From contig OZ281500.1 in the NCBI GenBank assembly GCA_965637545.1, positions 744,001 through 808,000 on the forward strand: a DNA stretch of 64,000 nt, in the 5' to 3' direction. The stretch's first letter is position 1. Each line of letters starts with the position of its first letter. This document shows, piece by piece, positions 10,401 through 31,320 of this stretch. The notes below the pieces were generated by a model, which worked only from the letters and a program-made list of their open reading frames with translations, was not told the origin of the DNA and did no database searches. Position numbers and translations under genes: made by a program. Source of the DNA: Phallusia mammillata. Its lineage: Eukaryota.

Positions 10401-13400
10401 GGCGCTAACAGTCTCGAACATCGACAAAACTCAAATAAACAACAACGTTGTCTTACATTCCGTTCGATCCGAGCTTCACGTTGAGGATTCCCATTGAAAT
10501 TGCCATAATAAGCAGCGGCGCTCCCCATCCAGCGAATATGTAATACTTCACCCAACGTCGAGCGGACACGAACACAACGACCACTTGCGAGTAAAGATGA
10601 ATGCCTGTGTGAGAGGGATAGTTGAGTTAAGTTGTGTTCAAGTGTTAGGGATGGAAGGAGACATTGTACGCCGTCGATCATTGCCACGATTTGCAAAACG
10701 ACCGCATATGTCTATTGGCTTGATGATTTTACATTGATACTGAAGTGACATCACTTTGTTTCCCAAGCAGTTGGTTGGCCATTTTGAACCATTTTTCTCT
10801 GTGGTTTATGCCCAGTTGTGGCATCGAACAGAATAGGTGAGACATGACTTTTTACCCTGTTACTCTCAACAAACTGGAGTGCTGTTAGATGGCCACACTA
10901 GCCAATACGGCCTATGTCTTGTCACCAGCTGCACTGATGAGGCCTTAAAGGTCGAAACAGTGTGCACTGTCTGCGGCTGCTATGTGTTGCATGAAAATGT
11001 ACGGAAATATGGCCCTTGACGTTTGTAGGGTAATTTGTTATTTTGATAACCATTGAATATATTTCGAAACTTGATCTTCTAATATAAGTCTATATTATAA
11101 AGGACGGTAATGATTTTGCCCCATGGACAATTGCATGTTATACCGGAATGACAAATAAACTTTGTTGCTTTTAATGCATTATTTCTTGAGAAAAATAGAG
11201 ATCGGGGTTACTGTTTGTTTCAACATGGGTTCGGTTTTAAAGTACACTTGTGTTTACTCAGTACGTCAGGCCCATTGGAAGCGATATACCGAATCAAGCC
11301 GGTTTCACAAGCATTTCCATATGGTACGGCATAAACTAGAAAATCTAGCCTGCGGCGGGATTCGAACCCTCACGAATGTTTTCATACTAACGTATGTTTA
11401 CTAGTATTCATATTTTAAATAAAAAACATCATGTTGGCCACAGTCATAACTAAATTGTTGCAAAATAATCAACCTTAGGGCATCGGTCTACCGCGAAATG
11501 TGCTTTTAAGTGACAAATCTAAACGAAAACTTGTTACCTAGGTTCTCTTTAGTGTTTGGCAAGTGATTTGGCGTTTCGAGCGAACAGATTTAAAACGTTT
11601 AAAAACGCTCATAATCAATTAACCGTTTGAAACCGACTTGCGTGCGAACAAGCCAGAATTTGCCAGACATTTTTGCACGCCAGATCCAAATCAGTTGATT
11701 ACGTAATTACACAGTGGCGAGTTGATGTGAAAATTTCGCACGCGATTCTCCGCCAATCCTTCATGAACTTTCCCATACGTCATCACCCGGCAATCCCGCT
11801 CCCCACCTTCTATAAGCATCCACGCCAACACCGACATGTTGAAGTAATAGAGGAATACTGTGACGATGACGCAGGTGGTTGTGGATGACTCAGCAATTTC
11901 TTCAAAGAGAAACACGAGGTCTGCCAAACCTACCGCCACACCGAGATTAAAGTGAATCTTCATGTTTTCTGTGTGAAATCTACAGGGAAAGTTCGTAGGT
12001 TAACCAATGCAACTGACAAAGTTTGATCTTGGTCGTAAAAATATCTCAATACTGAGAAAAACAAAACGTAATGGTTTCCAAAAAGCAACACAAAATTCAC
12101 GTTTTGTGTGTTTTCCCAACGGAAACAACTAGCTGTGACGGACAATATATAGGTTACTTTTGATTTTTCTACAACACATAATTATTTTAAAGATTTTGTC
12201 GGAATTTTTCAAATTCACCACCCTCTTTTGTAAACACATTTTGCCACGATCAACCCAATAAGAATGTTGATTGATGGAAACACTTGTATGTAAGGTTGCG
12301 TTGACCTTATAGCACGACCTATGATAGAGCCACCAAAACTGTCAGGTGACTTAAACCCTGGTAAGTCTGTTTACACGTCGATGGAATATTCAGCATCTTG
12401 CTGATGTTGTAACGCTCGAAGCCTTATCGCATCAGTAACATGATGTTTGGAATGCCACACACATTACTTACTTGAGTTTGATGAAAGCCGCACACATGAA
12501 GAGAACGCCGATAAACGACAACGCGCAGCCGATCTTTGATATTATGCTGAGCGCTTTCTGGTGGCCGAGCACAGTTGCGTCGTCCATGTTGTAATCGACG
12601 ATCTAATCACAAACATGTTTCAATGAATGCCCTGCTGACATAGAACGCTTTTTCAGCAACTTATTCGACGACCGAGTGCCATGACACAGAGTTCGTAATG
12701 ATGAATAGACATTAGGGCTGTAGATGCGCTGCTATTTATTTGTAGGTTGGGTACTGAGTTTTAGGCTAAAGGGGAATTAGGTTAATAGTCTTTTGTTCTC
12801 GAGTTCGATTCCTAGCTCAAACCTTTACAGTTTACGGGTGGATTGTAAACTTGAATGGCATAAGGGCTGTGGATGCGATGTTTTATTTTATTTGTAAGTC
12901 GGGTATTGAGGTTAAGTTTAAGGATGTCGCAGTCTTTCGCTCACGAGTTTGACTTCTACATTTTTCAATTGTAAACTCCTTCGACAAGCTCCATAAAGAT
13001 CGTATTGTTAGCAGTCGGAATAAATAGTGTTATAGGATGAGTTTACCTGTATAAGCACGGCAAAGCTTGTGAGATGTGAACAGTTGCAGACAGTGTGTGT
13101 TGCATTGGATGAGAGCACGGAACAGCCTCTGGTTGACCAAGAACCTGCGTCACCTCCACTACAAGCGAACAAAACATACACGAGTGGTTAGTTGAAGGTT
13201 TGTCCCGTTTGCTGTGGTCGCTACCAGCAGCGTTGTGGCTCGCGTAGTAAGTGGATGTATTTACTGTGAGCGGGTGTGGCAGCTGAGTCTTACAACAGCG
13301 ATCTGGCTTGTATTTGTCGAACACGGGCTTGACAGATCGCGTAAACAGACTTCTTGGCACGCAAGGAGGATGCCTCTACAGCTCGCAGTGCGAATGTAAA

Positions 13401-16400
13401 ATCGTAACGAGGAACATATTAAGAGGATTAGTCGGGCGGATACGGGCTTGTCCATGTACATTTGTCGCACATGTTTTGCGACAACAGCAGCAGTAGGAGT
13501 TAAGAAATTTACGGAAACCTTTCATGGTGGCGATTACCTCATATGTGACATGGCGCAATCCTATAGGAAGTTTTTGCCAAATATGTTAATGGGATCTGAT
13601 CAGAAAATGCAAGGTAAACATTTACTCTGGAAAGAAAGTGTAAAAATTATGCAAACCTTCCTATGCATAACAAAATCAATTGGGTGTATTTTTCACATTT
13701 GAAGAAGACCAACCTACCGAACATTAGACATAAAGTGAATATTATAGACACTAAAATAAAAGTAGTCGTAGCTTGATCAAATAACTGCTATCGCCATCAA
13801 ATAGCGTGTGTGTAGTGAGTACATTCCATTGAAGGCGTTGCAACAATTAATATTGTAAGCATCGGGTGAAATTAAGCAAACTATTTACAAGCTCTGCGGC
13901 AGTTTGTTTTCATCAAAACAAACATCCAACTTGTGGTAATTTCATAAATTAACACCTGAACCGACCTGGTGTCAGTATCCCAATACACACAGTGAAGCGT
14001 CTCCTCGCTGTGAGTGATCGGACTCGGTTCGGGGGCAGATGTTGTCCCGTTGACGGGTCGGTCCAATCCAGTCACATTACCACGCGCTTCTCTCTCGTGC
14101 CTGAACACAATGATGACGGGATCACGTTGGAAGACAACTTCCGGTGGAGGCGGGATGACGGTGGTGGTGAGAACAGCGCTGTTGATCACATTACGACGAA
14201 CTGTTTCTCCACGCTGCAATCTGGAAAAGTTTGAAAAAAGTTTGGTTGCAAATTTTGTAAATGATGTAAAACTTAGTTCAGAAGCAGTTTGGAATCCATA
14301 AGTGACACATATGCATACAAGCGCCCCTGATCTTTATGGATTATTAAAGGATTTGTATTTCCAGGCGAATAAAATATGTTTTTTCCACCAGCCTTGCGGT
14401 TCACAAGCAATGTCACCGATATACAAGACAAATGTTTTTCAATCTACAACCCAACGTCTCCTCACCTGTCGTCGTTTTTCCGTGTCGGCATGGAACGACC
14501 TAAGTTCTTATACCTCACATTCATCACCACAGATTTGTCGCCTAATGCTCGGCGTGGTAAACTGATCGTGTCACCCAGAAAATCCTCACGCCGAGGTGGG
14601 AAAGTTGTGTCTGAAACCGAAAGGCACAGAAGATGCAATAACATTTCCGTGTTCATCTAACTAGCTTAAAACTTATCATGCTTATCTGGCCAACTGAAGG
14701 CATTAGGTCATTGCAACCTTGTTTTCGTAGTAGTAAGAAATTCAAGTTTAAAATATCAAGTTTGTTTAACACAAGGCCGAAGCAATATTAAGATACAAAG
14801 TAACAAACTACAAACAATCTCACGTGTGTTTGTGACGAATGTTTGGTGTGGTCGCTTGGTGGCGCTGGTGGTGGGGCGGATTTCCTCCCCCTCATCTTCT
14901 TCTTCCTGCTCATCCGGTCCAGGGAAGGTGTAAGTTGATGAGGATGTGGATGAAAATGACTCATCAGAGCTGCTGGAGAATGTTTCCCCATCCCCCGTTG
15001 ATCTTACGAGAGGTGAGTTTTCACCCCGTCCGGTTTTGATCACTTCCATCCAAAATGCTGAGCAAGAGAAACATAGAAATTTGTTATCAGTTGTTTCTGA
15101 AGGTGAATAAACTAAAATAGTTTTGCAAAAATTGTCCAGAAATTTTTGGTTTCTGCCAAACGCAAACACAGCAATAGGCTGGAAATTAGAAAACGCGAGA
15201 AACATGGCCGCTGTATGCAGGTTAACAAAAACAAATGTTACTCACCCACTGATTCCGCCTCCGACTTGATGTAATTGTTTGAAGTTTGGTTTGCATCGAG
15301 CAGATAGTGACTGGCTTCTCTGCACAAGGTTTCGGCGGTCGTCACAACACCAGCGCTTCCAGGAACAACGGGATTCTGCAACAACAAAACTCTTGTCAGC
15401 ATTTGCCACACACGTGTTGAAATACACAAGGGCATGCGACAGGAGGACACCAAGTACATGTGGACACGACAGAATGCCGAAGTCTTACAGCTGTAACCCC
15501 AAACTTTGGCGCGTGAGTTTTTGCTGCAAGCACCGATTGCACAAAGATGTCTGTCCTGTTCGTTGGTGCGTGTCGAACTCGTCATTGGGTTAAAACTAAA
15601 AATAGACGAGGGTCGCTTTAATGCTGCGTCGGTTTCGCTTGATATGACACCGTGTGCTTCAGCAAGTATCAGTAACTTTCCAGCGTTTTTCGCAACGTGT
15701 TAACTTTGATCGCTTTCCAAATGCAACAGCTAAACGACATGACTTTACACTAGCTAAGAGTTATGTCGCAAACTGAAAACCCCTGGAATTTTATACCGAG
15801 TCAAATGCACTTCTGTGGTTTAGGGCATTTTTTTACAAAACCCGAATGAAGCAACAAACAAAATCAAATTGTTTGCGCGTCGTCATAATTCCACTTCTGC
15901 GAACACATGTCATTATTTCACGTGTATAGCTTTGCCAAATATTTCTCCCAAACCAGGCAAACAATTTTATCCGGCCGCTTTTATTTGGAATTGAAGTAAA
16001 GGGTAAAAGTTTACCACTAAACCACAAAAATTTCAGCGATTCCCCGCTTGCACAAGTATATTGTGTTGCTAGATATTCCGGGGGCCAAAACATTGCAAAT
16101 ATGCTTCAAGATTTGCAAGAAGTAAAAAGTAACTGAACACAATGGACAAGCGGGAAGCATTGTTGGACGCAGTGATCGTAAACACCCGAATTGTCACCAT
16201 TACTTGGAGATATAAACATCAGATAATACGAGGCATCTTCTATCCTACAGCGATCAAAAAACTCAAAGCCCGCGGCGCATTGATCCAGCAACGAGCGAGT
16301 TGAACAGGCGTAATGACCAGCGAATACGAAAAGAGGATTTGGTCGCCGGAGTCCGAGCGGAAACACACAGACCGCGACGGCCCAGAGAATCGCGTGCGAA

Positions 16401-19400
16401 GCCATGTTTTGTGCGCGGAACTTCTTCACTGGGGAAGCATCGGCATTCCGCGCACGTTTCACCTGCGACCCCAACCCGAGTTCGTTCATCACGTGATTCG
16501 CCAGTTCACCAGTCGTAAGCGGCTTGGAACGGCCGATTGTCTTTGCTCAATACTTCAGGGGAAACGGGATAAATCACAAATCGAACAAAGTTTATTGCGT
16601 CACAATCGCGTGCCGTATCTCCCGACTCGTAAATTCGAATCAATAGTATTTGACATCGTCGTGACCTGCCAAGCGAATCCGCCTTTGTTGACATCCAAAG
16701 GTCGCTCATGCTGAGGCGGAGCCCCTATACCACGTGCGCCTTTTTACAACTGTGGATTGAAGTGTCAGAAATCGTGGCCAGTTTCACCGTTGTTTAATCG
16801 GCCAACCTGTATCAGCTGCTATTTATAAATATTTGTAACCGAAGCACGTTGTGTCTCCGCCGCTTTGACATTTTTACGGGAACGAAGCTACGCGGCGCCT
16901 CGAAAGCTGAGCTTGTATTTCCCGACGTGGAGAAGCAGACGACTGTGTGTTGTGGACTGATTGCGTGTTAGCTTGGGGATTTAATTGCCCGACATGGTGC
17001 GGTAAGCAGCGGTAGTAACTCGGTAACCTCGGTCGCACGCGATCCTAGGCTTCTGTTGGTTACTTTTCGCCGATTTCTGGAAATCCGCTACCTCAGTTCT
17101 GTTGTCACGCGAGATGCTGCACGCTACAAGTGGCATCGGCACGACACGATCGAGCGCGCTTTAATTACTCGTCCACTACAAGCCCGATGGGTCAGTGGCC
17201 GCTAATGGCCGGCGCCTGCACTCCGCTTCACCACATAAAGCAATGGCGGCCGGAACAGATCAGCGCTAATTATTGATTTAACAGGGAGAAGCGAAACGAC
17301 GATCGGTCACGCGATGTCGAGGATTAAACTCCAGCTTATCAGTTGATTCTGGTTGTAGTCTGCACGCGACACTCAAACCTTGACACGCGAACTTGGTTAG
17401 AAAGCCACGCTACTGTTTTCTCCGACGTTAAACAGCGGAAGAAGTGAAGGGTATTTAGCGCGAAGCTCGGAAGGCCAGCGGTGGCAAATACGACTGAGGC
17501 CAGATCACGAATAATGAGAGTTGTGCAGGTTTAGATACTTTGTGTAGTTGTTTGCCTTCGTGCCCGATTTGGATTTGCCCTGGTTTCAACGGGACCGAGG
17601 TAGGGCAATAAACTCGCCCCTCGCCAAACAACACAACTAGCGAACAGGCGGTTTCACTACGAAGCGGTATTAGCAGGAATGTTAGGAATGTGGGGACAGC
17701 GCGAGTGCATTGCTGGCTGCTGATGGTGTCTGTAGAAATTGGGAAATGTGACAAGAGTAGGGGAACTCAGGAAGCAGGTCTCTCCAATGCAAGGCACAAC
17801 CCGGAAAGCGATCAAATGCATTCGGCGTTATTTGAAACGCATTTACTCAAGTAACAGCCGCAACAACAAACATAGCATTGCGCCCTTGTGGTTGTGCCAG
17901 CGCAATTTAATTACTTTATGCAGCAGCCAAAAAACGCACAGGAGTGTTGAACAATAGTTTAGCAACCGAAAAGAAGTTAATATATCAAGGGCATAAATTG
18001 TTTTCAGAATTGCAAGCACAAAACTACATAAATCGAAAATCAAATCGTTCAAGTGTTTTCACAAAATGAGTTGAATTTATGACGAAGCATTTTAGTTGGC
18101 AACCACTTGTCCATGAACCCACTTGAGTTTAACCAAAGTTCATGTGTGGTTAACTGCACGGTTGTTCGTCGCAAAGTGCCAGGCGCTCGCGTACGAAGCT
18201 ACCTTCCTCGCATCATAACCACCGCCAACCCTTAGGGGGATTGCGAGGCTCAGTTCGTTGCGTTGCTCAGCTGAAAAGGAAAGGTCGCCGGGTAATTGTT
18301 GCCCCGACCTATACAAACTCGCTACTAACCCTGGTATTCAGCAGCAATAGCTCGTTTGTTCTACAGTGTTCCCTCTGGGATGAATGACTTTTAGAGGGTG
18401 ACATCAGGGCTATATTCGGCTTCCCAGCTGACCTATTGGTCTAGTTAAGAAGTGGCGTAAAAGTAGGTTTGCTGCTTGGTGGTCTATTGTCAATAACAAA
18501 GTCTATTTTGCCGCAGCCGGCAGTAGTGCTAGCAGGAAGACATCTGGTGGAGTATAGTTGGTCGCAAAACTTAAGTTAAGTATAAGAAAAAGTTGGTTGA
18601 AAGACAGATGCACTTGTACAATGCAGCAGTTAGACGTTCAACATTCAAAACATTCAGAAGTTTAACATCGAAAACAGGCACGGTTTAATGTTCTGTGGTA
18701 TGCATAGCAGGCGTAGAGAAGGCAGCCAATAAAACAACGCGTTAAGATTTGCTTGTCTGTTCCTTACTGAAACATAGTTGTCGTGATAGTGGAAATAATC
18801 CGCACATTCAGTGTTTAGGGTACGACTATTCAAATTATCACTAATGTCACACATTTGGCTTTAAAAATTGGTGTCGAAAAATTTTATATTTTGGTGTGCT
18901 GGCAACCGACAGGGTGTTTCTGCGGTATCGAAAAAACTGAATTCCTATATAGCATAGTATTGAGAAGGTATTCGATCAAAATTGTTGCAGTGCTACGTGC
19001 CTCCCTGCACGGTGGTCGTATGTGCACAGGACAGATAATATACTTGTTTGATGTGGACAGCAACGCGATGTCCGATCAAACTTGTTCCTGCGATGGCAGC
19101 ACACAAAAGTCGCGTGACCTAGACGAGATTAAATAAACAACCGGCTTTAACAGTCGAAGAATGATTAGGCGTTTTCACTCACATAAGATAGACTCTGATC
19201 AACTTGAAAACTGGAGAAAAGGTTACTGTTGCCGAGAGCTTAATGAGCTCGGTTTGTGGACCACGCAGCGTTTGTGATGATTCGTTGATGTATATTTATG
19301 GTTCAAATATTTTGGGAAACAGGGAGAACAGTATAATGTAAACGCTGCTACCAGTCCTGCGTAGGAATTCAAGTCGAAAGCAAAGTCCAACTTAAACATC

Positions 19401-22400
19401 TAAACGCAAACGGTAAAGACAATCCAAGGCAGAAACACAGAGAAACCAAAATTATATTTTTTAAAGTCCAACCAGTTGTATTAAATAATTCATGAAAACT
19501 AATCAGTGTCAACATTTTCTAAATATTCAAAGCCCGGAATGCTTTAATGTGATTCCGTTTCAATTTCTGTCAAATCATTGCAATCGATTGCCGGAAAACG
19601 ATAAAGGAATTTTGTATTTGATGTTTGCCAACAATTTGAATGTGCCATAAAGTCAAACTAGCCATTGAATTTATATTAAAACCGCCCTTGGTAAGCAAAT
19701 CTCATGGATTGACGTGTTTTAATGCCTATACCCTGTTTGACATTTTTAATCTTCTTTAAATAGATCAAAGAAATGTCAATGAACTATTTCTCAAAAACTT
19801 AAGATATGTACAGACTAGTAAGATTCTTTACACCTCGCACATTTCTGTCTAACATAATATTAACAACTCCTAAGAAACCAAAATCAGATATAATCAACGA
19901 TTCCGCTGATCTTCCGCAAATAATAACACGTTCTTATTCCAGGATGAACAATCAAACGATCTAGGGTGTAATAATGTCGTGCTTTGTGACGTCATTGGTA
20001 CGTCACATAGGGTCATTGTGGTGCGAACCCACCACTATTGTATTGACTTGGATTGCGTTCTTCAGTTTTGCGATTTACTGGCTGCAGAAAAAGTCTTCTC
20101 GGAATCTCGACACCGATGGTAAGATTTCTATTTGCTGGCAACGATCTCTGTGGTCGTTATGGCAACAATAATAAAATCAAAATTGACACCTATCTTACTG
20201 TGACAGGCTGCATTTTCTTATATAGACGCTGATAAAAGTGTTCTCTGGCAGATGTATTACGACAGTGCGATCATTTGTCATTTTTACACAACTCTTCAAA
20301 TAGGCGGATTTTTTTCCATTCCATTTAGGCGCATTATGTATGAGTCTTAATTATAACTAACTTGTGATTTCACGCAGGCGGCAAAAATCACGTGACACAC
20401 TTCCGTGACCTCCCGTCACCCCGGGGAATCCCCCTGCTGGGTAATGTGACCCAGTTGGGTGATAAGCCCCACCTTGTTCTGACCGAGTGGGCGAAGAAGT
20501 ACGGATCTCTGTTCCGCATAAAGATAGGATGCAAAGACGTCCTGGTTGTTACGGGGTTAGACACGATCCGGTAAGAACACTGAATATAAATTGCGATTTC
20601 TACGCGATTCACTTTGTAAGCAACCAAACAAACTCTCTTCACAAACGTTTGTCAAAAAAACCTTTTGTGATCAGATAAATGATAATACCCAGTGGCGGAT
20701 TCAAATTTTTTGTCAGCCGGTTCTATCACAAAAGTCATATTTTCAGCCGGTTTGTTACAAAAAGTCCATTGACCGTAACCAGTAATGCTAACCGGTTTGC
20801 TGATCTCATAAAATTTCGTGAGACGATTCTATAGAACCGGTGCGAACTGACTGAATCCCACCACTGATAATACTAAAGTTGACCCATATAAAAATCCGAA
20901 CACAAAAATCAACGGACTAACCATACACAACTATTATGCATTTGTGTTGAAAGACAGTCAACATTTAAATCGAAGACAGTCCTTCCCCTGTAACGTATAC
21001 TGCCTTGTGTCGTTGATTTCAAGGCATTCCTGGTTTATTTGAAGGAAGGCCAACCAAAAACGGCACGGAGACTTCGCTGGTCGACCACCTTACGAAACGT
21101 CCAAACTTATCTGCGAGGGAAACAGCATGACCTTTGAAAACTACAGGTAACTTGGGAAAATAGTATCCAAGCCCTTGTTCGCAACTTAACCTGATGTAAG
21201 TTGTAGAATGTGGACAAAACTTTAAATAATAGTATTATTTGTAAGAAATAAATAGTCAGTTCGAGTTTGGTTAAGGCCATTGTTTAATTGTTGTAACTAT
21301 ACAATGTAAAGGTCTGCATGTAATCCAATCATAACTGTTCTTCTGATTAAAACTAATGTTTCGACATACAATAAATATTTGCACCGGATTGTACTTTTTG
21401 TAAAAGAAACAAGAAGCACAAGTTTGGTTAAGGACATTGTTTAACCGCTTGCCTCAGAATGAAAAAGGTGCTTTTGTGCAACAAAGATTTTTGGGGAATA
21501 AACAAGCATGGTTGTTGTAACTCTATACGGTGGAAAGGTTTGCATATGATCAAATCATAACTGCTTGTTATAATATGCGGATTTGAGGCAAACTACTCAT
21601 CCCAGACAACTTATATTTAGTGAGAGTTGGACGCGGAGGAAGCGTTGCGCAAAGCAGGCGATTCTACTTTACACGACTGGACGCGATCCCGGGAAGAGAA
21701 GTGTGATGGAGGAATCAGCAAACTGGAACGCAAACAACCTCATTGATGAGATGATCGAAGATGCTGATGAACAGGTCAGTGAGTCGGGGTGCGAACATAT
21801 GAACTTTACATCTATCCAATTGATAAACAAATTCCTTTGCTCTATACAAGTGAACTTGTTTTTTGATTCAAGTTTGTAGAGCTTTTCCGGCAATTTTTGT
21901 TTTTTTATCGTTCACTGTACTACGCGCATTCAGTGTTATTTACCCTGATGAAGACGACCTGTATAGGACGTCGAAATGTCGGAATAAAACTACGATTGCC
22001 AGAAGAGCTCTATACACTTGATATTATGCCTGGCAGCAACAGCTTATATATGGTTGTTTGATTCTTTGAAGTGATTTTCATGTGCAATTCCGATAGTGAA
22101 ACTTGGGCAAAGTTGTTTATGAGGCATATTAGGTTTAAAACACTTCAATTAAAACAACAATTCAACTATTCCCAGGTATAAATTAAAGCTGCATTTGTTT
22201 TGCACTGAAAAGCTCAATCTAGCAGCACAAACTCTTATTCAATGGACTGGATAAACTTCTTACAAATCGACGTGTTTTGACGTGGTTAGTGTGCGGGGTA
22301 ATTGTGTATTTTGTTGTGATACGCTTCTAAAAGATCTTTACGCTGTCGCAACTGTATGGAACGCACAATGTATCGAAATTGACGTTGTAATGAATTTTCA

Positions 22401-25400
22401 CGCTGAATGGAAATGAATTGGGTCGGTTTCAACAAAATCATTCAAAGAGTTAAGCAGCATGGAGTAAAACTGTTATGAAAAAAGATCAGTTAATTCGCGC
22501 TTTTCACAAGCCTATACACACCTTATACGAAATTACACCACAATAATTTAAAGTACTAGATTATATGACGAAAACCATGAACAAAACGTTTCACAATAAT
22601 AACTTTGATTTGTAAATTCGCTTGAACGAAAGGAATAAAAATTCAAGACATTTCTGGTTTTAATCAATACAAATTCAATGGCTGTCCTGTGTGAGATAAT
22701 TCGATGAGACTGTCTGGTATTTGCGGCGCCATTTTGATTACGAATAATGTAATTGGTATCCGTGAAACGGTCGAAAATGGTTGCCCGGCGTACGAAGGCA
22801 AATTAATTTCTAACAGATAAACACATTAGTTAAGTATTGGTCTATGAATCAAACTAACCGACAAAATGTAGCCTTTAAAACCTTCTCACATTACTAGGAA
22901 ATGTATGCTGCACATGAATAGACCTAAAGTTGCTCACAGTGGCCCTCAGTGTCTCAGAGAGCTTATGTGTATGCCTATATAGACACATGAAAAATATATG
23001 CTGTGCATAAACTGGTGTGTGACCATGGCGTGTACATCTAATTTTGCTCACAGTGGCCCTCTGTGTACTATGAAAGCGTGTAGGCCCAGATACATCAACA
23101 AGTAGCTTGACTAATCCTTAATTGCCACAGTTTCACATTTAATCGGGCTTGTGCCTCGTTTGTTTCGCAAAAACTTATCGTTGAAGTAAATAAGAAACCA
23201 ATTACAATTGTTATTTATACATATCAAAAGAGGTATTTTTTATCGGCAAACGGCGACAAGGTTCTCTGGTTAGACTTGATTAAAACAAAACTACCACTTG
23301 CTTTTAGATTTATCCGAAAGTAATATATTAAGCCAACGCTTAAAATCCTGAGACATCTTAACTCACATATTGATTTTCATGTTGGAATGTTTACCAACAG
23401 GATCACGTGATCGACCCGGAACCGCTGGTATTGAGAAATGGACTCAACACAATCAGCCAACTCTGCTTCGGCAGAACGTTCGGAAAAGGCGACCCTATGT
23501 TGTACGAGTTTCTCTCAATCAGTCAAAGCTTCGATGGGGCGATGGGATCGGCCCAGCCCGTCAACTTCTGGCCTTTCATCAAACACATTCCCGTCTTAAA
23601 CCGACCTTACAAGGTAGGCTGGTTTGGTTTTAAGTGATCTATCATATGTTGACGATGGGCAAAAAGTCCACTTTTTACGGTGGTTGGTGAAGAACATTCT
23701 TGCAACTATAAACTCAAATTACCAGAATATTCCTGTCGAAAGTATGGGATTCCTACTAATTGCCCTCTCAGTAAAACATATGCACAATAAGTCTGTTTTG
23801 GTGGTAGTTGTGGTAGAATTTATTGCTAAAAAAACATGACTTAGAACTTCAACTCTTAATAGCGAGTTATGCCATCGAGATCCATTAAGTCGGGGGTTTC
23901 ACAGTTGGTGAACCCAATATTTGTGGTAAACTCCCACCCCCATAAATACAATGTTAACGTGGAAATCCCCCAGGTAATCCCATCCTACGTCTTTGGGTGA
24001 TAACTAGTCGATGAGAAAAATGGGAAAACCGCAGAACTTTGTTACAATTTTGGTTGACGTGTAGACTGTTCTAAGTGCTAGTAGTGCTTCTAATCGTTGT
24101 TGGGCGTATGTTTAGTGCAATTAATTTGGTCCTGATTGCAATGACTGGGCGTGTACACTCAGACGTGCCCAAGATCGTTTGTTTAATTGCAGTTTGGGAA
24201 ATAAATAAACACCCTGTGGTTTTGATGCATTTCGTCATCAAGTACAACGAAAATCTGACATAAAGATATTTGAATCAGTTTTTGCCAAACGCCATTTACC
24301 TTCCTTATGTATTCTGTGTCAGCTAACTCAACATATCTTTACCTGCTTTTATTTTTCAGCACTTGCAGACATACGCGATTGCCTATTGGAAATTCGTGGT
24401 TTCGCTTTTGGACAAACACTTGGATACTTACAACCCAAATCACCTGCGAGATATCATAGACTGCCTCAAGTTTGCAAGCGACACGGCATCGAAAAAAGCC
24501 AAGAATACCAACAACAACGAGAACACTGCTGACTACCTGATGACATCCAACGGTGTGAACGGGAATTCGTGTCAGCACGCCCAGGACAACGGATGTAATG
24601 CAAATATCGATGGATTGACCAATGACCTTGATCAAGGTGACTCTTCAGCGTACAATCTCCAGAAGAGAATATGTTACACAGCTGGTGATGTGTTCGGTGC
24701 TGGGTATGACACTCTGCACACTGCGCTCATATGGACGATATTCTACATGGCTGCCTTCCCAGAAACACAGAAGAAGGTGAGTCAAGCTATCTCAGATCAA
24801 GTATTGCTCCATCTCAGTGATTAGTTTGACCATTAAACTGATCAACCCATCCTAGTACACTGTGTCTTTGAGCAAACGTTGTCACAATAAGTTGGAAAGC
24901 TGAAATCGGACTAGAACTTAGATTAGCTACGAGTGTTTCAAAAAGTGACAAAAGACAACAAAATGTTTGATAGTAAAATGTTTTTTCAAGAAATTTTGCT
25001 ACAGATCTTGTGGAAATTTAGCATCTGGTAAAAAGTAAGTTTAACCCCAATGTGTTTTTGAGTGAAACTTATAGCAACTTGTTTTGTATGGAGTTAAGAG
25101 ATGAGGTTGACGCCGCTGTTGGTCCGGACGAAAACCCAACACTTCGCCTTCATAAATCCCTCACACCCTATACACAAGCGTGGATCTATGAAGTATTGCG
25201 ACATGTCGCCATCGTCCCGCTGCTTATCCCTCACTACACAACGCGAGAAACCGAGCTGGAAAACTGCCAAATACCTCCTGACGTTATCGTGATGCTCAAT
25301 GCCTACCAGGTAAAACTTCACAAGGTTTTGTATGTAAACTAGCTCAAAGGTTTTCAAGTAGTGTGTGTATAATGTATAAACGCAAATATATCGAGAAAAA

Positions 25401-28400
25401 TACATCGTGGCTACAGATGCCACGAGCTTTAGTTGTGAAAAGTTCCCTTTAATTCTGGTTTCCTGAAAACCAATTCCTGAAGTAAACTCGGCTAATCCGT
25501 TTTCTAATACATATGTCAATTGTCGGATCAATTGGTGTCTGGAAAGTAAACGGACGGCCAAGTGTTTTAATGAAACAACTGAAGTATTTACACAAAATAC
25601 ACCGGGACAGATGCCACGAGCTTGAGTTGTGAACAGTTGCCTTTAATTGTGGTTGCCGTGGTGGAAAAAATATCCCTGAATAAAATCTGCTAACCCATTT
25701 TCTAGTATAGCCTATATGTCACTTTTCGCATTAATTGGAGTCTGGAAAATGAAGTGCCACTTGATAAACATGAAGTATTTTTCTCACGTAGACAACACGA
25801 GATCCTGAACTTTGGGAAGAACCAGAAGAATTCCGTCCGGAGCGCTTCCTCCAAGAGTCGGAGGATGGAGAAGAGGGAAGTCGGTTGTCCGGAGAAGCTG
25901 TTTCCAACTTAATCGTGTGGGGGACTGGACCACGCAAGTGTCTGGGGTACGAGTTGTCACGGAATCAGCTCTTCATATTTGTTTGTAACCTGGTTCGACG
26001 CTGCAACATCGCACAATCCAGACCCGGGGTGGAACCAGTTTATCCGTGGCCAGTAACATTCGGACTTACAATAAAACCGACCGAGTTTAAAGTGAAGATC
26101 ACTGAGCGATAGACGGCGGTAAAATGTGCCTATTCACTCTGGAATTACTGCGTCATGCTATACGTAACACAAGTATTGGCGTGCGAAAGTGAAGTCAGCA
26201 GTCTTTCCTTAATTGATGTCCGTATTATAGGTAACACAAACCGGTTGGACCTCCGTTGTTGGGCTCGAAATTTTAACACAATGCACAATGCCTAAAACTT
26301 TGTTGTTGTAACTGACAGAACTTATAAGCGTCGTTGAGTATTTTTTCTTGTGTATTCGCAGAGGTGTTGTCCGTAGTTTTATTCGTTTCCAAATCCCTCA
26401 AAGTCTCCACTTTGCTCGAATTTTGCTTTTCATCCGTGTTCTTCATATCGATAATACCGACAACACATAGAAGGGGCACACTTCCTTCGCCTATACAACC
26501 TTCTCTCAGCCACTTCTGCTGTAAGAGAATTCTAACAGCTAATGAATAGGCTGGTTGACAACTGCGTTTCCGTTTCAACAAATACGTTTCCTCTGTTTGT
26601 ATTGATGACTTGCTTGGAGTTGTGGTAAACTGTGTTTGCATGCCAGCGTAGTTTGTTTCGTCTGCTTGAGAACACAGTGTTGTAGCTGGGATAATATTAT
26701 TAATTTCTCTGTTTTTTGTATCTATGCCTGTTTCGTGCTTGATCGTGTTGCAATTAACAGTGTTTTGTGTCGTTGTTCCTCAGAGAATAAAACTTATGTG
26801 TGTACCTAAACCGAACACAGGGAAATTGTTTCTTTTACGGGCCGATATTTAAGCGCCAATCGCTTACTACCACGTATCCAAATCTTTAGCGCCACCCTTC
26901 GACGGGCAAGTACATGCTGTCTCCATGGTAACGGCAGCTAAACATGTGACTCGCAAGGGCATGGTTGTCATTGGCTGAATAAACTTTGTAAGTGTTTCGC
27001 AGTGGAGTGTTTGGTTTGATGGCATGGAGAAGCCGACGCTGACATGGCGAACCATTAGTCGAACACACAAACCCGAATATACAATAACCGCAGAATAAAC
27101 GCGATCAGCCCCGAAGCCACTGAGGTCAGATAATCATCATCGTGTGGCAAAGAGAAAAAAACGAAATCTGCTGACCGAGTTTTCGTGGAAAGTAAAATCT
27201 GATGATATCAGGTTAAGTTAACTAATCCCACAAATAAAACGTCGCCAGAGCAACAGTCGAACAAGCAGCAGTAATCTACAAACACACGAGGCTGCATTTA
27301 ACGTCGGAAACTTATTAAGTTGCGCTTGGCGATCAACAGTGACAAGGAAGATAAAAAATGTCTTCGTTTGCTTGACAAAGTAGGTAAATCAAAGTCCATT
27401 CATACCCGATATTTTCAGACGTCGATCTAACTTCCTATTCTCTAATGATTCGGTTTTCGCGAGAAACTTTTAACATGCAACGATTGTTAAAATGTTGCTC
27501 CGGTTCGCCATGCTACATGGTATTGACTAATAGATTTGACAGAATTATTTAAATGTTCAGTTTACCTTCTGTACCATTAACCATGCATCAGCGTAGCTCG
27601 GGTCGATAATCAGGCTGCTCACATTGGCAATCACGTCAGTGAACTCTTTCACGCCCTCCAGTGACGTGTTTGCAATGGGATTTAGCTTCATGACGGTCTG
27701 ATACAAAACAAACGAATTTTAGTTGTTTTTCATCCAACCTTACACATATAAGCTATTGCTGCCAGGCATAGTATCAAGGTTAAAGAGCTCTTCTGGCAAA
27801 TGTGATTTTATTCCGACACATGATGTACTGGTCTTGAACTACAAAGCCATGTTGGATGCAAACGTTTTCATTGGTTCTGAAACACTAATGGTATCACTAG
27901 CAAACACATCACTCCGACCTTATACGAGAAATGCCAAATTTGGTATGTTTTCTGGCGGTGTGTTCAAATACAATGCTTTTGCATGGGAAGATGGTATTGG
28001 TTTACGGTTACCATGACATTTACATCACGACACAAAGATTCCTGAAACAAGGTCTAGGTGAAACTTTAATGAGGTACGAGGACGGCTTTGGACTCACCAG
28101 TATCGATTCTCCGGCAATTTCAAGCTCACTCGGAAGAATAGCGGCTATTCCAGCAGTGATTTCACTCCCTGACCCTGGTTCTTCGGCTGGTTGAACCAAC
28201 TCTGCAACATTTCCGAGCGCTGTACTCGCTTCGGCTACGTTAATTTCCGTGAGATTTTTCAGTCGGTTGACCTAAACAAAAATTTTAAGTTGCCATGTTG
28301 ACTGAAAGCAGACACATGTAAGTCCTTAAATTTAAACTAGCACCACATTTCCCAGTAACAACATATTCAAAGCAAGTATGTTAAAATACACTTTTTTGTT

Positions 28401-31320
28401 CTTTTTTGCACATACCATAAGCCTCGGGTAATCTGGGCCCGTTTGGACCAAAAAATTGTCCCGAATAGGCGAAGATCCGAATTAACCGATGTTGATTAAA
28501 TTAAATCTTTGTACTTCAAATTTTGTCTAAATTAAGAGATTCGGATTTGCCAAATCCATAAAGCCTATGTTGAACACACGCGAGTATTTTGTTTCACCTC
28601 TTCTTCCATCTGCCTGTACTTGGCCGACTTCCTTTCGAAGTAATCCCAACCTACTCCGCCGTAAGGGTCATCGGGCACTGTGCCAGGCTGGTTGTAGAAC
28701 GCTGGGGGAGCGGTGCCGCGCGCCTTCTCGTAGACTGAGCAAGCCCTGGCCTCAACGCTGTAGCAAAAACTGCGGCAGTAAATAGTCTTTTCCTCCAGAC
28801 AATTCTGCACGCATTCCTCCATCGAGATTTGCGTCCAAAAGAAGTTGTACTCGTCTGCAGGACAAGAAAGAACGTGAGGAGATAACTCTTTGGGGGATGG
28901 CGCCATGACACACTTAAACTGCCACAATAGCGGAGTTCTTTTATGCTGCGCTGTGCTCGAAAACGCGTCAGGGCTACAGGTTTGTTTCGATTGAGGTTAC
29001 AATGTACATGCATGAAACGTTTCAGAACATTATGCTTTACTCTTTAGACAAGCACACAACCAAGCATCCACATATATACTTATAAACTTAGCTGTTGTTA
29101 TCCAGGCTTGGTTACAAAGTTTAGGCCACAACGAATGCTGTAGTGAAATATAAACTTCAACTTACCCATTTTCATTCCACGGACGCGGACGAAATCACGT
29201 TCAACTAAAATTAAAATAAAATGAAAGTTAAACTTCTGGTAACAGTAGATAAAATATTTAACAGCTGCGGCAATATGCGTGCAATATGTATATATGTAAA
29301 TATATATTTGTTAGATACTTTAGACCAGTGGTTCTCAACTGGTGGTCAATGGACACTAGTGGTCCATGATGACTTTTTGGGTGGTCCACAGGACGTCCGC
29401 TAAATTTGTTGATAAACTAGAGATGATAGCATATTATATATTAAGAGAGCATTAAAATGTTACCTGTTTATCATTGTATTTTACTTCTTGAAAATCGGTT
29501 TTAAAGAATCATGTTTCAAGCCCAAAAGGATTGTTTCGTATGCGTACTTCAATCTTGATCCAAAAGAAATGTCCACGATATTATTTTTATTGAGCCAGTG
29601 GTCCATGGCCTAAAACTAGTTGAGAACCACTGCTTTAGACATTGGCAAAAATCAAAACGTTGGCTTCCCACTCGGACTTAATTATGTCGTAATATTATTT
29701 AAAAAACTTTCGGATTAAATTTCGACCCTCTCCCCCTCAAGGTTTCTTTCGGAAGCAAATGCCCTAAAATCTAGACTCAAAAATATCGATTGAAGTTTTT
29801 GCAAATGATGCCTAAAGGATATCTCAAAATTAACGAACAGCGCTTGATAAACGACAAACCAGAAGAAATTGTTGGAAAATAAATACGAAAAACAGTGTTG
29901 TGTTTCAGTGTGATGAGCACGAGGTATTGCGAAAGGTCGTCGCCAGACAACATTGAACTGCACGGCTGGATTTAAGCTAACTTTCTAAGGCCTACTTTGT
30001 GGCTGTCATTCGCGACGAAACAGCGCCCTTGTTTGAAGTTGTCTGGACCGCGTCTGCGGCGACGACACTGTCCCTACGCCAGCGGTTCCCAACCTATTTG
30101 TTGCCGTGACCCCTTAAGAACATTTGCAGTGACCTCAAGGATAAAATTAGTGGGGCATACATTATAATTTTTATAGCTATATATTAAAGATCCACCCCAA
30201 CTTTAAGTACTCGTTTAGATACTAATTAACAAACAATCGCTGGATTGAATAAGTGCGGTTATTTTGTATTCTATTTGTTAAACACATTTTTGACTTACCG
30301 TGTTTGTTTACTGTATTTTTTCTTAACAATGAAGTTGTCCAAAAGTTTATTTTTTAGGGGGCTATAGTCGTCCATGGCCTAAAATGAGTCGGGAACCACT
30401 GACTTAAGTGACCCAGGTAAATTGTCAGGCGATCCCAGTTGGGGACCGCTGCCCAACGCGATTAAATATACAAACACGAAGCTGAAAACGAAAATGCAAT
30501 CTGCAAAACTATTTCGGTTCTGGTAAACCCAAGCAGCATGGCTCAGTCTAGTCTATGGTTTATACGAGAAACATTTTTCGGTATATGCGACAATTACCTC
30601 ACCACAAATCCTGGTAATTGACAAACGTTTGAAACAAATATTGTACATTTTGGCTTTACAAGTGATTTTATAAATCTTTGCTTTATAAAATTTTATTATT
30701 GGGGCTTAATACAGTGTTCAATTTTGGTTTTGCTACCTTTTCGAGCAAATTCAGTTTTAACAAACATCTAAAATCGAAAACAAACTTTACAGGGCAAAAA
30801 AAATCAGAGTCAGTATATTTGTGTAAAACATGACTACGTTTCGACAAGTGCTATTGTCATCATCAGGTCATAAGAAATACAAGCGACAGAAGGCATGCAA
30901 CTGGGTGCCACACAACGGTTTACACAAATATAATGGCTCTGATTTTTTGCTCTGATTATTTAAAACCGTGAATAGTGTACCTAAACTTTACAGAGATTTT
31001 ACCAATCTTAAAAATTTTGACAAAATTGTTTAACCCACTTTTCTTGAGAATCGAACTGTCGTCTGATCCGCTCATTCCAGCAAATCCAAAAAGAAATATC
31101 TGAGACAATAATTAAATGTAAATCATGACATAATTCCTGATGACACAAAATTATGACAACACATCGACAGTAACACGCATTTAAATCAGAGTTTGACATA
31201 AAAATAAATTCTCATAATTAAATCGTTAAATATCAACGTTGTCAACTGAATAAAAATTTAACAACTCACCAGCAAAAGATAGTGGGGATTACAAATCCTT
31301 AGCTGCATGTCGTTTGTCAT
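7408..31320 (-). CDS. Adhesion GPCR with N-terminal PAN/Apple domain, GAIN/GPS and ADGRD1-like 7TM; 18 exons, about 1016 aa
   Basis: Exons 31320-31270, 31099-31039, 28854-28598, 28271-28098, 27697-27566, 15375-15246, 15057-14824, 14610-14466, 14220-13966, 13158-13047, 12602-12472, 11979-11807, 10604-10457, 9988-9833, 9387-9219, 9160-8954, 8517-8278, 7683-7408; all GT-AG and phase-compatible (3051 nt). Signal peptide (HYLLLIFLFGFAGMSG); PAN (EECVQNC..CRSFCY..C..WDYFER); GPS (CVYW..GSWSTRGC..CNCSHL/TSFAVLIQ); 7TM motifs IHFNL, WMLIEGIHLY, GWGAP, CWLS..IWAF, LLGTTWLFG, NSLQGFFLFVFHCLCNSEV; C-terminal ETPV. The 7TM exons are the firmest part; exons 1-2 are less certain. Confidence 0.88.
7851..8061. 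mobile_element. hAT-type MITE
   Basis: Ends CAGGGGTCGGC...GCCGACAACTG, flanked by near-identical 8-mers ctttacag / ccttacag. Confidence 0.7.
8569..8836 (+). repeat. About 2.5 tandem copies of a 102-109 bp repeat in aGPCR intron 16
   Basis: ggaccactgt..acattagatgt..cacacaccagt recurs at 8577, 8679 and 8788; same family at 22921-23070 (reverse) and 57430-57525. Confidence 0.85.
10930..10966 (+). ncRNA. Minimal type I hammerhead ribozyme-like motif (probably inactive, GUG at the cleavage position)
   Basis: tgca-CTGATGA-GGCCttaaaGGTC-GAAA-cagtg-tgca: intact core, 4-bp stem II, 4-bp stem I. Confidence 0.5.
11345..11375 (-). mobile_element. tRNA-derived SINE relic (B-box/T-arm)
   Basis: Minus strand GAGGG-TTCGAAT-CCCGC T-arm with B-box GGTTCGAATCC; no intact A-box or cloverleaf upstream. 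Confidence 0.45.
12710..12979 (+). repeat. Diverged tandem duplication (about 149 bp) of a tRNA-derived element
   Basis: Units start cattagggctgtagatgcg (12710) and cataagggctgtggatgcg (12859); unit 1 carries ttaatagtcttttgttctcGAGTTCGATTCC, similar to the tRNA-like relic at 54798-54870. Confidence 0.6.
16390..17412. promoter_or_regulatory. Cluster of ten xenobiotic-response-element heptamers (TNGCGTG/CACGCNA) upstream of CYP1
   Basis: Hand-counted sites at 16390, 16606, 16961, 17036, 17106, 17120, 17308, 17363, 17384, 17406; one more at 19110. Confidence 0.65.
16824..17001 (+). promoter_or_regulatory. Putative CYP1 TATA box and non-coding exon 1
   Basis: TATAAATA at 16824-16831, donor CG/GTAAGC at 17002, and acceptor ttcttattccag/ at 19942, 32 nt before the CYP1 ATG. 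Confidence 0.45.
19974..26112 (+). CDS. CYP1: Cytochrome P450 family 1-like, 8 coding exons, about 586 aa, nested antisense in aGPCR intron 5
   Basis: Exons 19974-20118, 20378-20570, 21045-21146, 21621-21774, 23401-23613, 24360-24776, 25094-25309, 25792-26112 in frame (1761 nt; exon 7 acceptor is weak). N-terminal TM anchor, PSPRGIPLLGN, GDFAGRP, I-helix GAGYDT (CYP1-type), EVLR, PERF, heme motif WGTGPRKCLG. Subfamily not assignable. Confidence 0.93.
20690..20866. mobile_element. hAT-type MITE, same family as 36169-36339
   Basis: TIRs CAGTGGCGGATT...AATCCCACCACTG; 8-bp flanks ataatacc / ataatact; body closely similar to the 36169 copy. Confidence 0.88.
21872..22048 (+). mobile_element. Inverted-repeat-flanked element carrying a minimal hammerhead motif (family 1)
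   Basis: cc-CTGATGA-a-GACGaCCTgtatAGGaCGTC-GAAA-tGTC/gg (core 21945-21980); left arm gtttgtagagcttttccggcaat (21872-21894) is the imperfect reverse complement of the right arm attgccagaagagctctatacac, which continues ttgatattatgcctggcagcaacagcttata. Confidence 0.68.
22921..23070 (-). repeat. Reverse-strand copy (about 1.3 units) of the ~110-bp repeat family
   Basis: acagtggccc recurs at 22936 and 23050 (period 114); reverse complement matches the 8569-8836 units. Confidence 0.8.
25396..25782 (+). repeat. Diverged tandem duplication (about 194 bp) at the 3' end of CYP1 intron 7
   Basis: acagatgccacgagctt at 25413 and 25607; both units share tggagtctggaaa-like and tgaagtattt ends; unit 2 runs into the exon 8 acceptor. 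Confidence 0.8.
26919..26932. promoter_or_regulatory. RFX X-box motif
   Basis: GTCTCCATGGTAAC fits the 14-bp X-box consensus GTHNYY-AT-RRNAAC; CCAAT-type motifs at about 26857 and 26970. Confidence 0.45.
27747..27818 (-). mobile_element. Truncated end of the family 1 hammerhead element
   Basis: tataagctattgctgccaggcatagtatcaaggttaaagagctcttctggcaaa is the reverse complement of the arm at 21995-22048; followed by ttttattccgaca, the complement of the post-core segment tgtcggaataaaa. Confidence 0.75.
29326..29632. mobile_element. hAT (Buster/Charlie-like) MITE
   Basis: TIRs CAGTGGTTCTCAACT...AGTTGAGAACCACTG; perfect 8-bp TSD ctttagac. Confidence 0.92.
30080..30451. mobile_element. hAT-type MITE containing an internal end of a second MITE
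   Basis: TIRs CAGCGGTTCCCAAC...GTTGGGGACCGCTG; flanks ccctacgc / cccaacgc; internal gtccatggcctaaaatgagtcgggaaccactg (ending 30401) resembles the right end of the 29326 element. Confidence 0.75.
30794..30950 (-). mobile_element. Inverted-repeat-flanked element carrying a minimal hammerhead motif (family 2)
   Basis: Minus strand atgac-CTGATGA-t-GACAAtagcacTTGTC-GAAA-CGTA/gtcat (30871-30830) with perfect 5-bp stems I and II; arms 30794-30827 and 30919-30950 are imperfect inverted repeats unrelated to family 1. Confidence 0.7.

What the first reader, a model, noticed from the sequence alone, without database searches (positions are those of the whole stretch)
15376..27565. Complete CYP1 gene nested antisense in a 12.2-kb intron that splits the aGPCR GAIN domain
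Seen: aGPCR exon 5 (..VSSLIIDPSYADAWLMVQK) joins exon 6 (NPVVPGSAGVVTTAETL..) in phase 0, giving a continuous GAIN-A helix pattern; between them lies the 8-exon CYP1 with its own regulatory region. No other aGPCR intron exceeds about 2.2 kb. Inference: inducing the detoxification gene could interfere with receptor transcription, coupling xenobiotic exposure to adhesion-GPCR output; the nesting may be a datable lineage-specific insertion.
Basis: partly seen in the sequence, partly recalled or inferred. Interest (0 to 1): 0.72.

Follow-up and report, generated by a model that had tools for sequence, protein, structure and literature searches.

The report
P450 gene nested inside receptor intron
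In this sea-squirt genome a complete, expressed CYP1-like detoxification gene lies backwards inside one 12.2-kb intron of an adhesion-GPCR gene; this is a real but ordinary gene-within-a-gene arrangement, and no regulatory link between the two genes has been shown.

Summary
RNA-derived contigs from two studies join aGPCR exon 27566-27697 directly to 15375 on the minus strand. So the 12,190-nt GT..AG, phase-0 intron 15376-27565 is spliced out and the two receptor halves are one transcript.

Inside it, on the plus strand, lies a P450 gene with 8 coding exons (19974-26112) and 586 codons. All its introns are GT-AG and the canonical P450 motifs are present. An AATAAA sits at 26785-26790, and RNA contigs confirm the 3' splice junctions.

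Exon by exon, its best solved-structure matches are CYP1A1, CYP1A2 and CYP1B1. I made no formal tree.

The Styela clava orthologue (PAN-GAIN-GPS-7TM) is collinear with both halves. It has an intron at the same position and phase, inside its Pfam GAIN match. That intron is 1,351 nt and empty. The intron is therefore old and its CYP occupant is lineage-restricted.

The proposed xenobiotic-to-receptor interference is untested. Both mRNAs occur in all four RNA data sets laid.

Nested antisense genes are common in metazoans, and earlier notes of this scan report others in this same genome. Verdict: a new member of a known kind, of modest interest.

The parts
15376..27565 (-). Host intron of the aGPCR: 12,190 nt, GT..AG, phase 0
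   Evidence: Sequence. RNA contigs in X10 and X16 run from 27566 into letters identical to 15346-15375.
   Evidence: RNA contig pieces in 4 runs. 35% identity to Styela P0004 residues 190-232.
   Evidence: Loose-end match. Aligns end to end with Styela P0004 233-274, 16 identities, 0 of 2000 shuffles reach the score. A donor GTGAGT follows.
28098..28269 (-). aGPCR exon (start of the GAIN region)
   Evidence: RNA joints with CT..AC on the plus strand in 4 runs.
28596..28855 (-). aGPCR PAN-domain exon (boundaries +/-2)
   Evidence: RNA joints. Pfam PAN_1 32.8 bits. Its upstream partner exon ends at 29167.
13011..14333 (-). aGPCR GAIN-B exon (within 13884-14333) and GPS exon (13044-13160)
   Evidence: Pfam GPS 53.3 bits. 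tblastn of Styela P0004 residues 396-520.
9216..12602 (-). aGPCR 7TM exons (12471-12602, 11805-11981, 10462-10605, 9832-9987, 9216-9401)
   Evidence: Pfam 7tm_2 at 30.7-35.4 bits on four exons, in profile order 32 to 249. 59-81% identity to Styela P0004.
19974..20118 (+). CYP coding exon 1 (ATG, membrane anchor)
   Evidence: Frame and GT donor. The lengths of RNA contigs upstream of exon 5 (591 and 618 nt) fit the 589 nt predicted from the ATG.
20378..20570 (+). CYP coding exon 2
   Evidence: Pfam p450 33.6 bits. Best PDB matches CYP1A1 41.8 and CYP1A2 41.6 bits.
21045..21146 (+). CYP coding exon 3
   Evidence: AG/GT boundaries and frame.
21621..21774 (+). CYP coding exon 4
   Evidence: AG/GT boundaries. 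The RNA loose end at exon 5 matches 21740-21769.
23401..23613 (+). CYP coding exon 5
   Evidence: RNA contigs. Best PDB match CYP1A1, 33.7 bits.
24360..24776 (+). CYP coding exon 6 (I-helix AGYDT; about 46 extra N-rich residues relative to CYP1A1)
   Evidence: RNA joints GT..AG. PDB: CYP17A1 35.5 and CYP1A1 35.3 bits.
25094..25309 (+). CYP coding exon 7 (ExxR)
   Evidence: RNA joints. PDB: CYP1A1 47.7 bits against CYP2R1 34.3.
25792..26800 (+). CYP exon 8: CDS to stop at 26112 (PERF, heme loop WGTGPRKCLG), 3' UTR, AATAAA at 26785-26790
   Evidence: RNA contigs reach 26714-26793. PDB: CYP1B1 57.3 bits. Sequence.
16390..17412 (.). CpG-rich stretch with 10 TNGCGTG (XRE-like) motifs, 2.6-3.6 kb upstream of the CYP ATG; a candidate regulatory module, function not shown
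   Evidence: 10 observed against 0.95 expected from local first-order shuffles, 0 of 2000 reach it. No tandem repeat.

Best explanation
This is an ordinary nested-gene pair.

The host is a single-copy adhesion GPCR on the minus strand. Its domains are PAN, GAIN, GPS and 7TM, and its 7TM part is closest to ADGRD1 and ADGRL3. Host transcription runs through a 12.2-kb phase-0 intron, which is then spliced out.

Within that intron, on the opposite strand, sits an independent, intron-containing, polyadenylated gene for a CYP1-like microsomal P450. It has 586 codons and all catalytic motifs are intact.

The intron is older than its occupant. Styela clava has an intron at exactly the same codon boundary and phase, but it is 1.35 kb and empty. 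So the P450 gene most likely moved or was duplicated into an existing intron in the lineage of this species. The less likely alternative is that it was lost from the Styela intron.

Shown here: the splicing of both genes, their strands, an intact reading frame and the conserved intron position. Inferred: the direction of the event (gain rather than loss), CYP1 family membership, and any regulatory consequence.
For: Splicing across the intron.

Strands: GT..AG joints on the plus strand for the CYP, CT..AC joints for the receptor.

CYP model: 8 exons, 1761 nt, a single terminal stop, motifs AGYDT, EVLR, PEEFRPERF and WGTGPRKCLG, AATAAA.

CYP1-like: bits summed over exons 2, 5, 6, 7 and 8 are CYP1A1 195.9, CYP1A2 187.7, CYP1B1 175.0, CYP17A1 130.3 and CYP2R1 106.3.

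Host identity: GPS, PAN and 7tm_2 Pfam hits on window exons. Styela P0004 is collinear from 28852 down to 7498. GAIN covers 186-414 in P0004. The best PDB match of P0004 is ADGRD1, 231 bits.

Conserved empty intron in Styela: SLQR|gtgagt ... acaag|DPNV, L001 18693-20043. No P450 hit better than E = 0.2 anywhere in the 42-kb locus.

A homologue in an unnamed ENA assembly has no P450 in the 13.6 kb upstream of its exon-6 equivalent.

Nesting is common: PMC5174743, PMC13309782.
Against: - The polarity (gain against loss) rests on one named outgroup and one unnamed assembly. No closer relative, and no Ciona, could be examined.
- Assembly continuity across the intron's ends was not checked with DNA reads.
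- CYP exons 1-3 are supported only by frame, splice signals, homology and contig length, not by observed joints.
- The CYP transcription start is unmapped. An AG at 19941-19942 could mark an upstream non-coding exon.
- No phylogeny was made for the P450.
Confidence: 0.85

Rival explanations
1. Functional coupling. AHR-driven induction of the nested P450 collides with or terminates host transcription, so xenobiotic exposure lowers output of the full-length receptor.
For: The genes are antisense and fully nested. A significant cluster of 10 XRE-like motifs lies in the same intron upstream of the P450. Transcriptional interference between nested genes is documented in other animals (PMC5174743, PMC13309782, PMC3192792). 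XREs upstream of Ciona CYP1 genes are reported (PMC7068557, citing Goldstone 2007).
Against: There are no expression data with and without inducers. Both mRNAs are assembled in all 4 RNA data sets. Invertebrate AHRs have not been shown to drive xenobiotic defence or to bind the prototypical ligand dioxin (PMC3292500). Mammalian nested pairs show no expression divergence (PMC8467205). The arrangement is absent from Styela, so the receptor does not need it.
Confidence: 0.08
2. The nesting is ancestral to ascidians. It was lost, with shrinkage of the intron, in the Styela lineage rather than gained in this one.
For: The intron position is shared, so the site existed early. The unnamed ENA homologue also has no PAN exon within 13.6 kb upstream of its exon-6 equivalent, which suggests a long intron there too.
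Against: No remnant of P450 exons exists in the Styela intron or locus, nor in the 13.6 kb of the ENA homologue. Nested genes usually arise by insertion into long introns (PMC5174743).
Confidence: 0.2
3. The nested gene is a clan-2 P450 of another family (for example CYP17-like or an ascidian-specific family), not a CYP1. The xenobiotic reading would then not apply.
For: Exon 6 scores CYP17A1 35.5 against CYP1A1 35.3 bits. Identity to human CYP1A1 in the best exon is only about 37%. It has a 46-residue insert and Trp in place of Phe at the start of the heme loop.
Against: CYP1 enzymes are the top hits in 4 of the 5 exons tested, and the summed score exceeds CYP17 by 45-65 bits. Human CYP1A1 matches exon 7 better (47.7 bits) than any paralogue in the same genome (36.3 bits at best).
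Confidence: 0.15
4. Assembly artefact: the P450 locus was wrongly joined into the receptor intron.
For: No DNA reads were laid across 15376-19900 or 26800-27565.
Against: The window has no N and lies in a 312-contig, 240-Mb assembly. Three presumably-DNA studies (kinds guessed or unrecorded) hold 69-89% of the words of 20300-29000. The receptor exons on both sides are spliced to each other in RNA, so a long intron must exist there.
Confidence: 0.03

Closest known systems
Nested (intronic, opposite-strand) protein-coding gene pairs of metazoans
   Same: The whole gene sits inside one intron of a host gene on the other strand. Each gene has its own splicing and polyadenylation. The occupant is evolutionarily younger than the intron.
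   Different: The occupant here is a multi-exon gene, 6.8 kb from ATG to poly(A) signal, rather than a short young duplicate or retrocopy. The host intron is by far the largest mapped in its gene.
Tunicate CYP1-like genes (Ciona CYP1 family, Goldstone et al. 2007, as cited in PMC7068557 and PMC3292500)
   Same: A clan-2 microsomal P450 whose closest solved relatives are CYP1A1, CYP1A2 and CYP1B1. XRE-like motifs lie upstream.
   Different: No tree was made. It has a 586-residue product with an N-rich insert in exon 6, and WG.G.R.C.G instead of FG.G.R.C.G in the heme loop. Trp is also seen in a 55%-identical fragment on an unnamed Logan contig (P0009).
Adhesion GPCRs ADGRD1 (GPR133) and ADGRL3 (latrophilin-3)
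   Same: GAIN domain with a GPS motif, followed by a secretin-type 7TM. The Styela orthologue scores 231 bits against ADGRD1 and 192 against ADGRL3 over GPS plus 7TM.
   Different: The N-terminus carries a PAN/Apple domain, not the pentraxin or lectin/olfactomedin domains of ADGRD1 or ADGRL. Autoproteolysis and signalling are untested.
Styela clava LOC120331774 (XP_077966132.1)
   Same: The orthologue has the same domain order and is collinear over 1,100 residues. Its intron lies at the same codon boundary and phase.
   Different: Its intron is 1,351 nt and empty. Its largest intron is the first (5.4 kb).

Membership tests
Nested gene pair | The entire transcription unit of one gene lies within a single intron of another | tested here: met
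   CYP coding exons and 3' end lie at 19974 to about 26800, inside intron 15376-27565. The intron's removal is seen in RNA. The CYP 5' UTR start is unmapped. To escape the intron it would have to lie more than 4.6 kb upstream.
Cytochrome P450 superfamily (PF00067) | P450 fold signature with a Cys-ligand heme loop, ExxR, PERF and the I-helix (A/G)Gx(D/E)T | tested here: met
   Pfam p450 is above the cut-off on exons 2, 6, 7 and 8. Motifs AGYDT, EVLR, PEEFRPERF and WGTGPRKCLG are present.
CYP1 family | Closer to CYP1 enzymes than to other P450 families | tested here: met
   The top PDB hit is a CYP1 in exons 2, 5, 7 and 8, and exon 6 is a tie. Summed bits are 175-196 for CYP1 against 130 for CYP17A1 and 106 for CYP2R1. 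Solved structures only.
CYP1 family | Placement inside the CYP1 clade in a phylogeny, or about 40% identity by the nomenclature rule | tested here: inconclusive
   No named full-length reference sequences could be fetched, and the spliced protein could not be searched. Identity to human CYP1A1 in exon 7 is about 37%.
CYP1 family | AHR/XRE-dependent induction by planar aromatic compounds | not testable with these tools
   There is only a motif cluster (10 TNGCGTG in 1 kb). No exposure data.
Adhesion GPCR | GPS motif immediately before a secretin-type 7TM domain | tested here: met
   GPS 53.3 bits. 7tm_2 on four successive exons.
Adhesion GPCR | GAIN domain upstream of the GPS, with the intron inside it | tested here: met
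   Pfam GAIN scores 37.8 bits (cut-off 26.5) on orthologue P0004, residues 186-414. The window exon 27566-27697 aligns to residues 190-232 and exon 15244-15375 to 233-274. On the window itself there is only a sub-threshold GAIN hit (E = 0.008). A structure model failed.

The most novel reading that the evidence does not exclude
The XRE-rich CpG island and the antisense CYP1-like gene form an inducible 'roadblock' inside the receptor's GAIN-coding region. Aromatic pollutants or dietary ligands would then switch the receptor to truncated isoforms or to none. That would be a lineage-specific wiring of chemical sensing to adhesion-GPCR signalling.
Probability: 0.06. Interest if true: 0.6.

Novelty: new member of a known kind. 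Interest (0 to 1): 0.3.

Why it matters
The locus is a clean, transcript-verified example of a gene settling in a pre-existing intron. The codon position of that intron is conserved between distant ascidians, so the event could be dated with more genomes.

It also gives a curated model of a tunicate CYP1-like gene with a dense XRE-like cluster upstream. That is useful for asking when AHR-CYP1 regulation arose in chordates.

It does not reveal a new kind of system. The proposed coupling of detoxification to receptor output is a hypothesis without data.

Tried and rejected
- **AlphaFold2 of the Styela GAIN region** (P0004:150-530, single sequence) gave pLDDT 33.7 and is unusable, so no fold search was run.
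- **The search for homologous proteins** gave nothing that helped. CYP exon 8 returned one 177-aa fragment on a 1.7-kb Logan contig, too short to show neighbours. The PAN exon returned nothing. Styela P0004 returned only Styela proteins. No Ciona or closer orthologue could be reached.
- **The search of protein representatives** with the GAIN-B exon found only 4 proteins.
- **ESM Atlas** said only 'P450'.
- **Rfam** at gathering threshold found nothing in the window.
- **Repeats:** no large flanking direct or inverted repeats bracket the CYP gene that would point to a transposon-mediated move. There are no tandem repeats in its upstream region.
- **Other ORFs:** ORFs in the CpG-rich stretch and in the long intron of the ENA homologue have no Pfam match.
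- **BLASTP of exon 15244-15375 against Styela** returned nothing. A Smith-Waterman test with shuffles did show the homology.
- **Tandem P450 cluster on contig C3** (28.8 Mb) was rejected as a CYP1 paralogue. Its best matches are CYP2-type and plant enzymes.
- **Left out by rule:** any search or fold with the joined (spliced) protein of either gene. The spliced CYP reading frame was assembled only inside a script, to check its frame and motifs.
Full report
**1. What is at the coordinates**

Read on the minus strand, an open frame ends ...VSSLIIDPSYADAWLMVQK with CAG AAG at 27566, followed by GTAAAC. At the other end a pyrimidine-rich tract ending TTGCAG stops at 15376, and AAT CCC GTT (NPVVPGSAG...) begins at 15375.

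**2. Is it really spliced?**

I laid Logan contigs of four RNA-like runs from four studies on window 23000-28999, within the 6,000-letter limit.

- All four runs show receptor exons at 28596-28855, 28098-28269 and 27566-27697. The joints between them read CT..AC on the plus strand, which is GT..AG on the minus strand.
- In X10 (a 1,571-nt contig) and X16 (917 nt) the contig continues past 27566 for 255 and 233 letters that do not lie on the laid stretch.
- The 30-letter consensus of that loose end occurs once in the window, without mismatch, at 15346-15375.
- So mRNA joins 27566 to 15375. This rules out the refuting scenario of two separate transcripts.
- A further loose end places the next upstream exon boundary at 29167.

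**3. The host gene**

Pfam finds domains on individual window exons:

- PAN_1 on the 28.6-28.9 kb exon.
- GPS, 53.3 bits, at 13011-13187.
- 7tm_2 on four successive exons, in profile order 32-100, 99-139, 148-206 and 201-249.

An exhaustive profile search with the GAIN-B exon found only four proteins. One of them, P0004, is a 1,150-residue Styela clava protein, XP_077966132.1.

P0004 carries PAN, GAIN (residues 186-414, 37.8 bits against a cut-off of 26.5), GPS and 7tm_2. Its GPS plus 7TM part is closest to ADGRD1 (231 bits) and ADGRL3 (192 bits) among solved structures.

By tblastn, P0004 is collinear with the window from 28852 down to 7498. Residues 186-232 fall on 27706-27566, and residues 342 onward fall on 14617 and below. 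Exon 15244-15375 aligns end to end with residues 233-274: 16 identities, score 69 against a shuffle mean of 20, 0 of 2000 shuffles reach it.

The intron therefore falls about 46 residues into the Pfam GAIN match of the orthologue. This supports 'splits the GAIN domain'. I could not confirm the helix pattern structurally, because the single-sequence AlphaFold model was unusable (pLDDT 33.7).

The receptor's GAIN-B exon is single-copy in the 240-Mb assembly. All other introns I could map are 1.3 kb or less. The 5' end beyond 29196 is unmapped, so the exon numbers 5 and 6 are not verified.

**4. The nested gene**

On the plus strand I derived eight coding exons:

| Exon | Coordinates |
|---|---|
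| 1 | 19974-20118 |
| 2 | 20378-20570 |
| 3 | 21045-21146 |
| 4 | 21621-21774 |
| 5 | 23401-23613 |
| 6 | 24360-24776 |
| 7 | 25094-25309 |
| 8 | 25792-26112 |

- Every boundary is AG/GT. The frame is open for 586 codons with one terminal stop.
- The motifs AGYDT (I helix), EVLR, PEEFRPERF and WGTGPRKCLG (heme loop) are present.
- RNA contigs up to 2,363 nt show the joints 5/6, 6/7 and 7/8. Their loose end at exon 5 matches the end of exon 4.
- The contig lengths upstream of exon 5 (591 and 618 nt) fit the 589 nt predicted back to the ATG.
- Contigs end at 26714-26793, next to an AATAAA at 26785-26790. There is no RNA from 26800 to 27400.
- The gene is therefore complete, expressed, antisense to the host and entirely intronic. 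Its 3' end lies 770 bp from the receptor exon.

By rule the spliced protein was not searched. I searched exon by exon instead.

**5. Is it CYP1?**

Bit scores against solved structures, exon by exon:

| Exon | Scores (bits) |
|---|---|
| 2 | CYP1A1 41.8, CYP1A2 41.6 |
| 5 | CYP1A1 33.7 |
| 6 | CYP17A1 35.5, CYP1A1 35.3 |
| 7 | CYP1A1 47.7, CYP2R1 34.3 |
| 8 | CYP1B1 57.3 |

Summed over these five exons, the CYP1 enzymes score 175-196 bits, CYP17A1 130 and CYP2R1 106.

In the same genome, exon 7 finds only one other match at E <= 1e-5, on contig C4 at 9.12 Mb. That match is itself CYP1-like: CYP1B1 126 bits. A tandem cluster on C3 that resembles exon 2 is CYP2-like.

The literature states that Ciona has one AHR and five CYP1-family genes with upstream XREs (PMC7068557, citing Goldstone 2007). 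It also states that AHR's role in invertebrate xenobiotic defence is not shown (PMC3292500).

I rate CYP1 membership at about 0.8. No tree was possible.

**6. History**

The Styela gene lies on L001 at 10001-31907. Its exon ends ...SLQR|gtgagt at 18692, and the next exon starts acaag|DPNV at 20044. That is the same codon boundary and phase as the window's ...VQK|NPVV.

The Styela intron is 1,351 nt. No CYP exon finds anything better than E = 0.2 in the whole 42-kb locus.

A homologue in an unnamed ENA assembly shows no P450 in the 13.6 kb upstream of its exon-6 equivalent (two haplotigs, L002/L003 extended by L006/L007).

So the intron is old and the occupant is lineage-restricted. Gain in this lineage is more likely than loss in Styela, but one named outgroup cannot settle it. 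No large repeats bracket the gene.

**7. Regulation**

The intron holds a CpG-rich stretch, 16390-17412, with GC 0.51 and CpG observed/expected 1.38. It carries 10 TNGCGTG motifs against 0.95 expected from local shuffles (0 of 2000). It lies 2.6-3.6 kb upstream of the CYP ATG.

An AG at 19941-19942, after a pyrimidine tract, could be the acceptor of a 5' UTR intron. The transcription start was not mapped.

Nothing here tests interference. Both mRNAs are present in all four RNA data sets, and contig depth cannot be used to rank them.

**8. Comparison with what is known, and verdict**

- Nested genes are the commonest protein-coding overlap in eukaryotes and typically arise by insertion into long introns (PMC5174743).
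- Interference is documented in some pairs (PMC3192792, PMC13309782) but is not general (PMC8467205). Nested genes can even induce their hosts (PMC12274878).
- Earlier notes of this scan list other nested genes in this same genome. One follow-up names the genome as Phallusia mammillata or a close relative. I did not test that.

The finding is real and well delimited. It is a new member of a known kind, and the functional inference remains a hypothesis.

Noticed in passing
window 16390-17412: Ten TNGCGTG (XRE-like) motifs sit in 1,023 bp of CpG-rich DNA, against 0.95 expected locally. The stretch lies 2.6-3.6 kb upstream of the CYP ATG and about 1-2 kb from receptor exon 15244-15375. It could be the CYP enhancer or promoter, or an internal promoter of the receptor.
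   Followed up: partly
window 27743-27818, 21977-22052, 56137-56193: Copies of one short dispersed repeat, 82-87% alike. One lies in CYP intron 4 and one in the receptor intron 27698-28097. In RNA contigs it reaches very high depth, with many different flanks. It overlaps the element another note calls a hammerhead-carrying mobile unit. Rfam gave no hit at gathering threshold.
   Followed up: partly
window 24468-24656 (within CYP exon 6): An insert of about 46 Asn/Asp/Thr-rich residues relative to human CYP1A1 lies before the I helix. It is retained in the mRNA contigs.
   Followed up: no
window 25792-26112; L008: The heme loop begins with Trp (WGTGPRKCLG) instead of the usual Phe. A 55%-identical fragment on an unnamed Logan contig (organism not identified) has SWGLGIRKCLG, so the Trp may be typical of this ascidian CYP1-like lineage.
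   Followed up: no
G000:C4:9123212-9123418 (L005 934-1716, minus strand): A second CYP1-like gene in the genome. The equivalents of exons 7 and 8 are fused in one 260-codon open frame. Best PDB match is CYP1B1, 126 bits.
   Followed up: partly
G000:C3:28805695-28819877: A tandem cluster of at least five P450 genes whose first conserved exon is CYP2-like.
   Followed up: partly
window 19944-19964: A short upstream ORF (ATG AAC AAT CAA ACG ATC TAG) lies in the CYP leader, just after a possible acceptor AG at 19941-19942.
   Followed up: no
L001 32000-38600: Downstream of the Styela orthologue there is a partial duplicate of its C-terminal exons. P0004 residues 856-1150 match a second time at 36222-38567 with 41-88% identity.
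   Followed up: no
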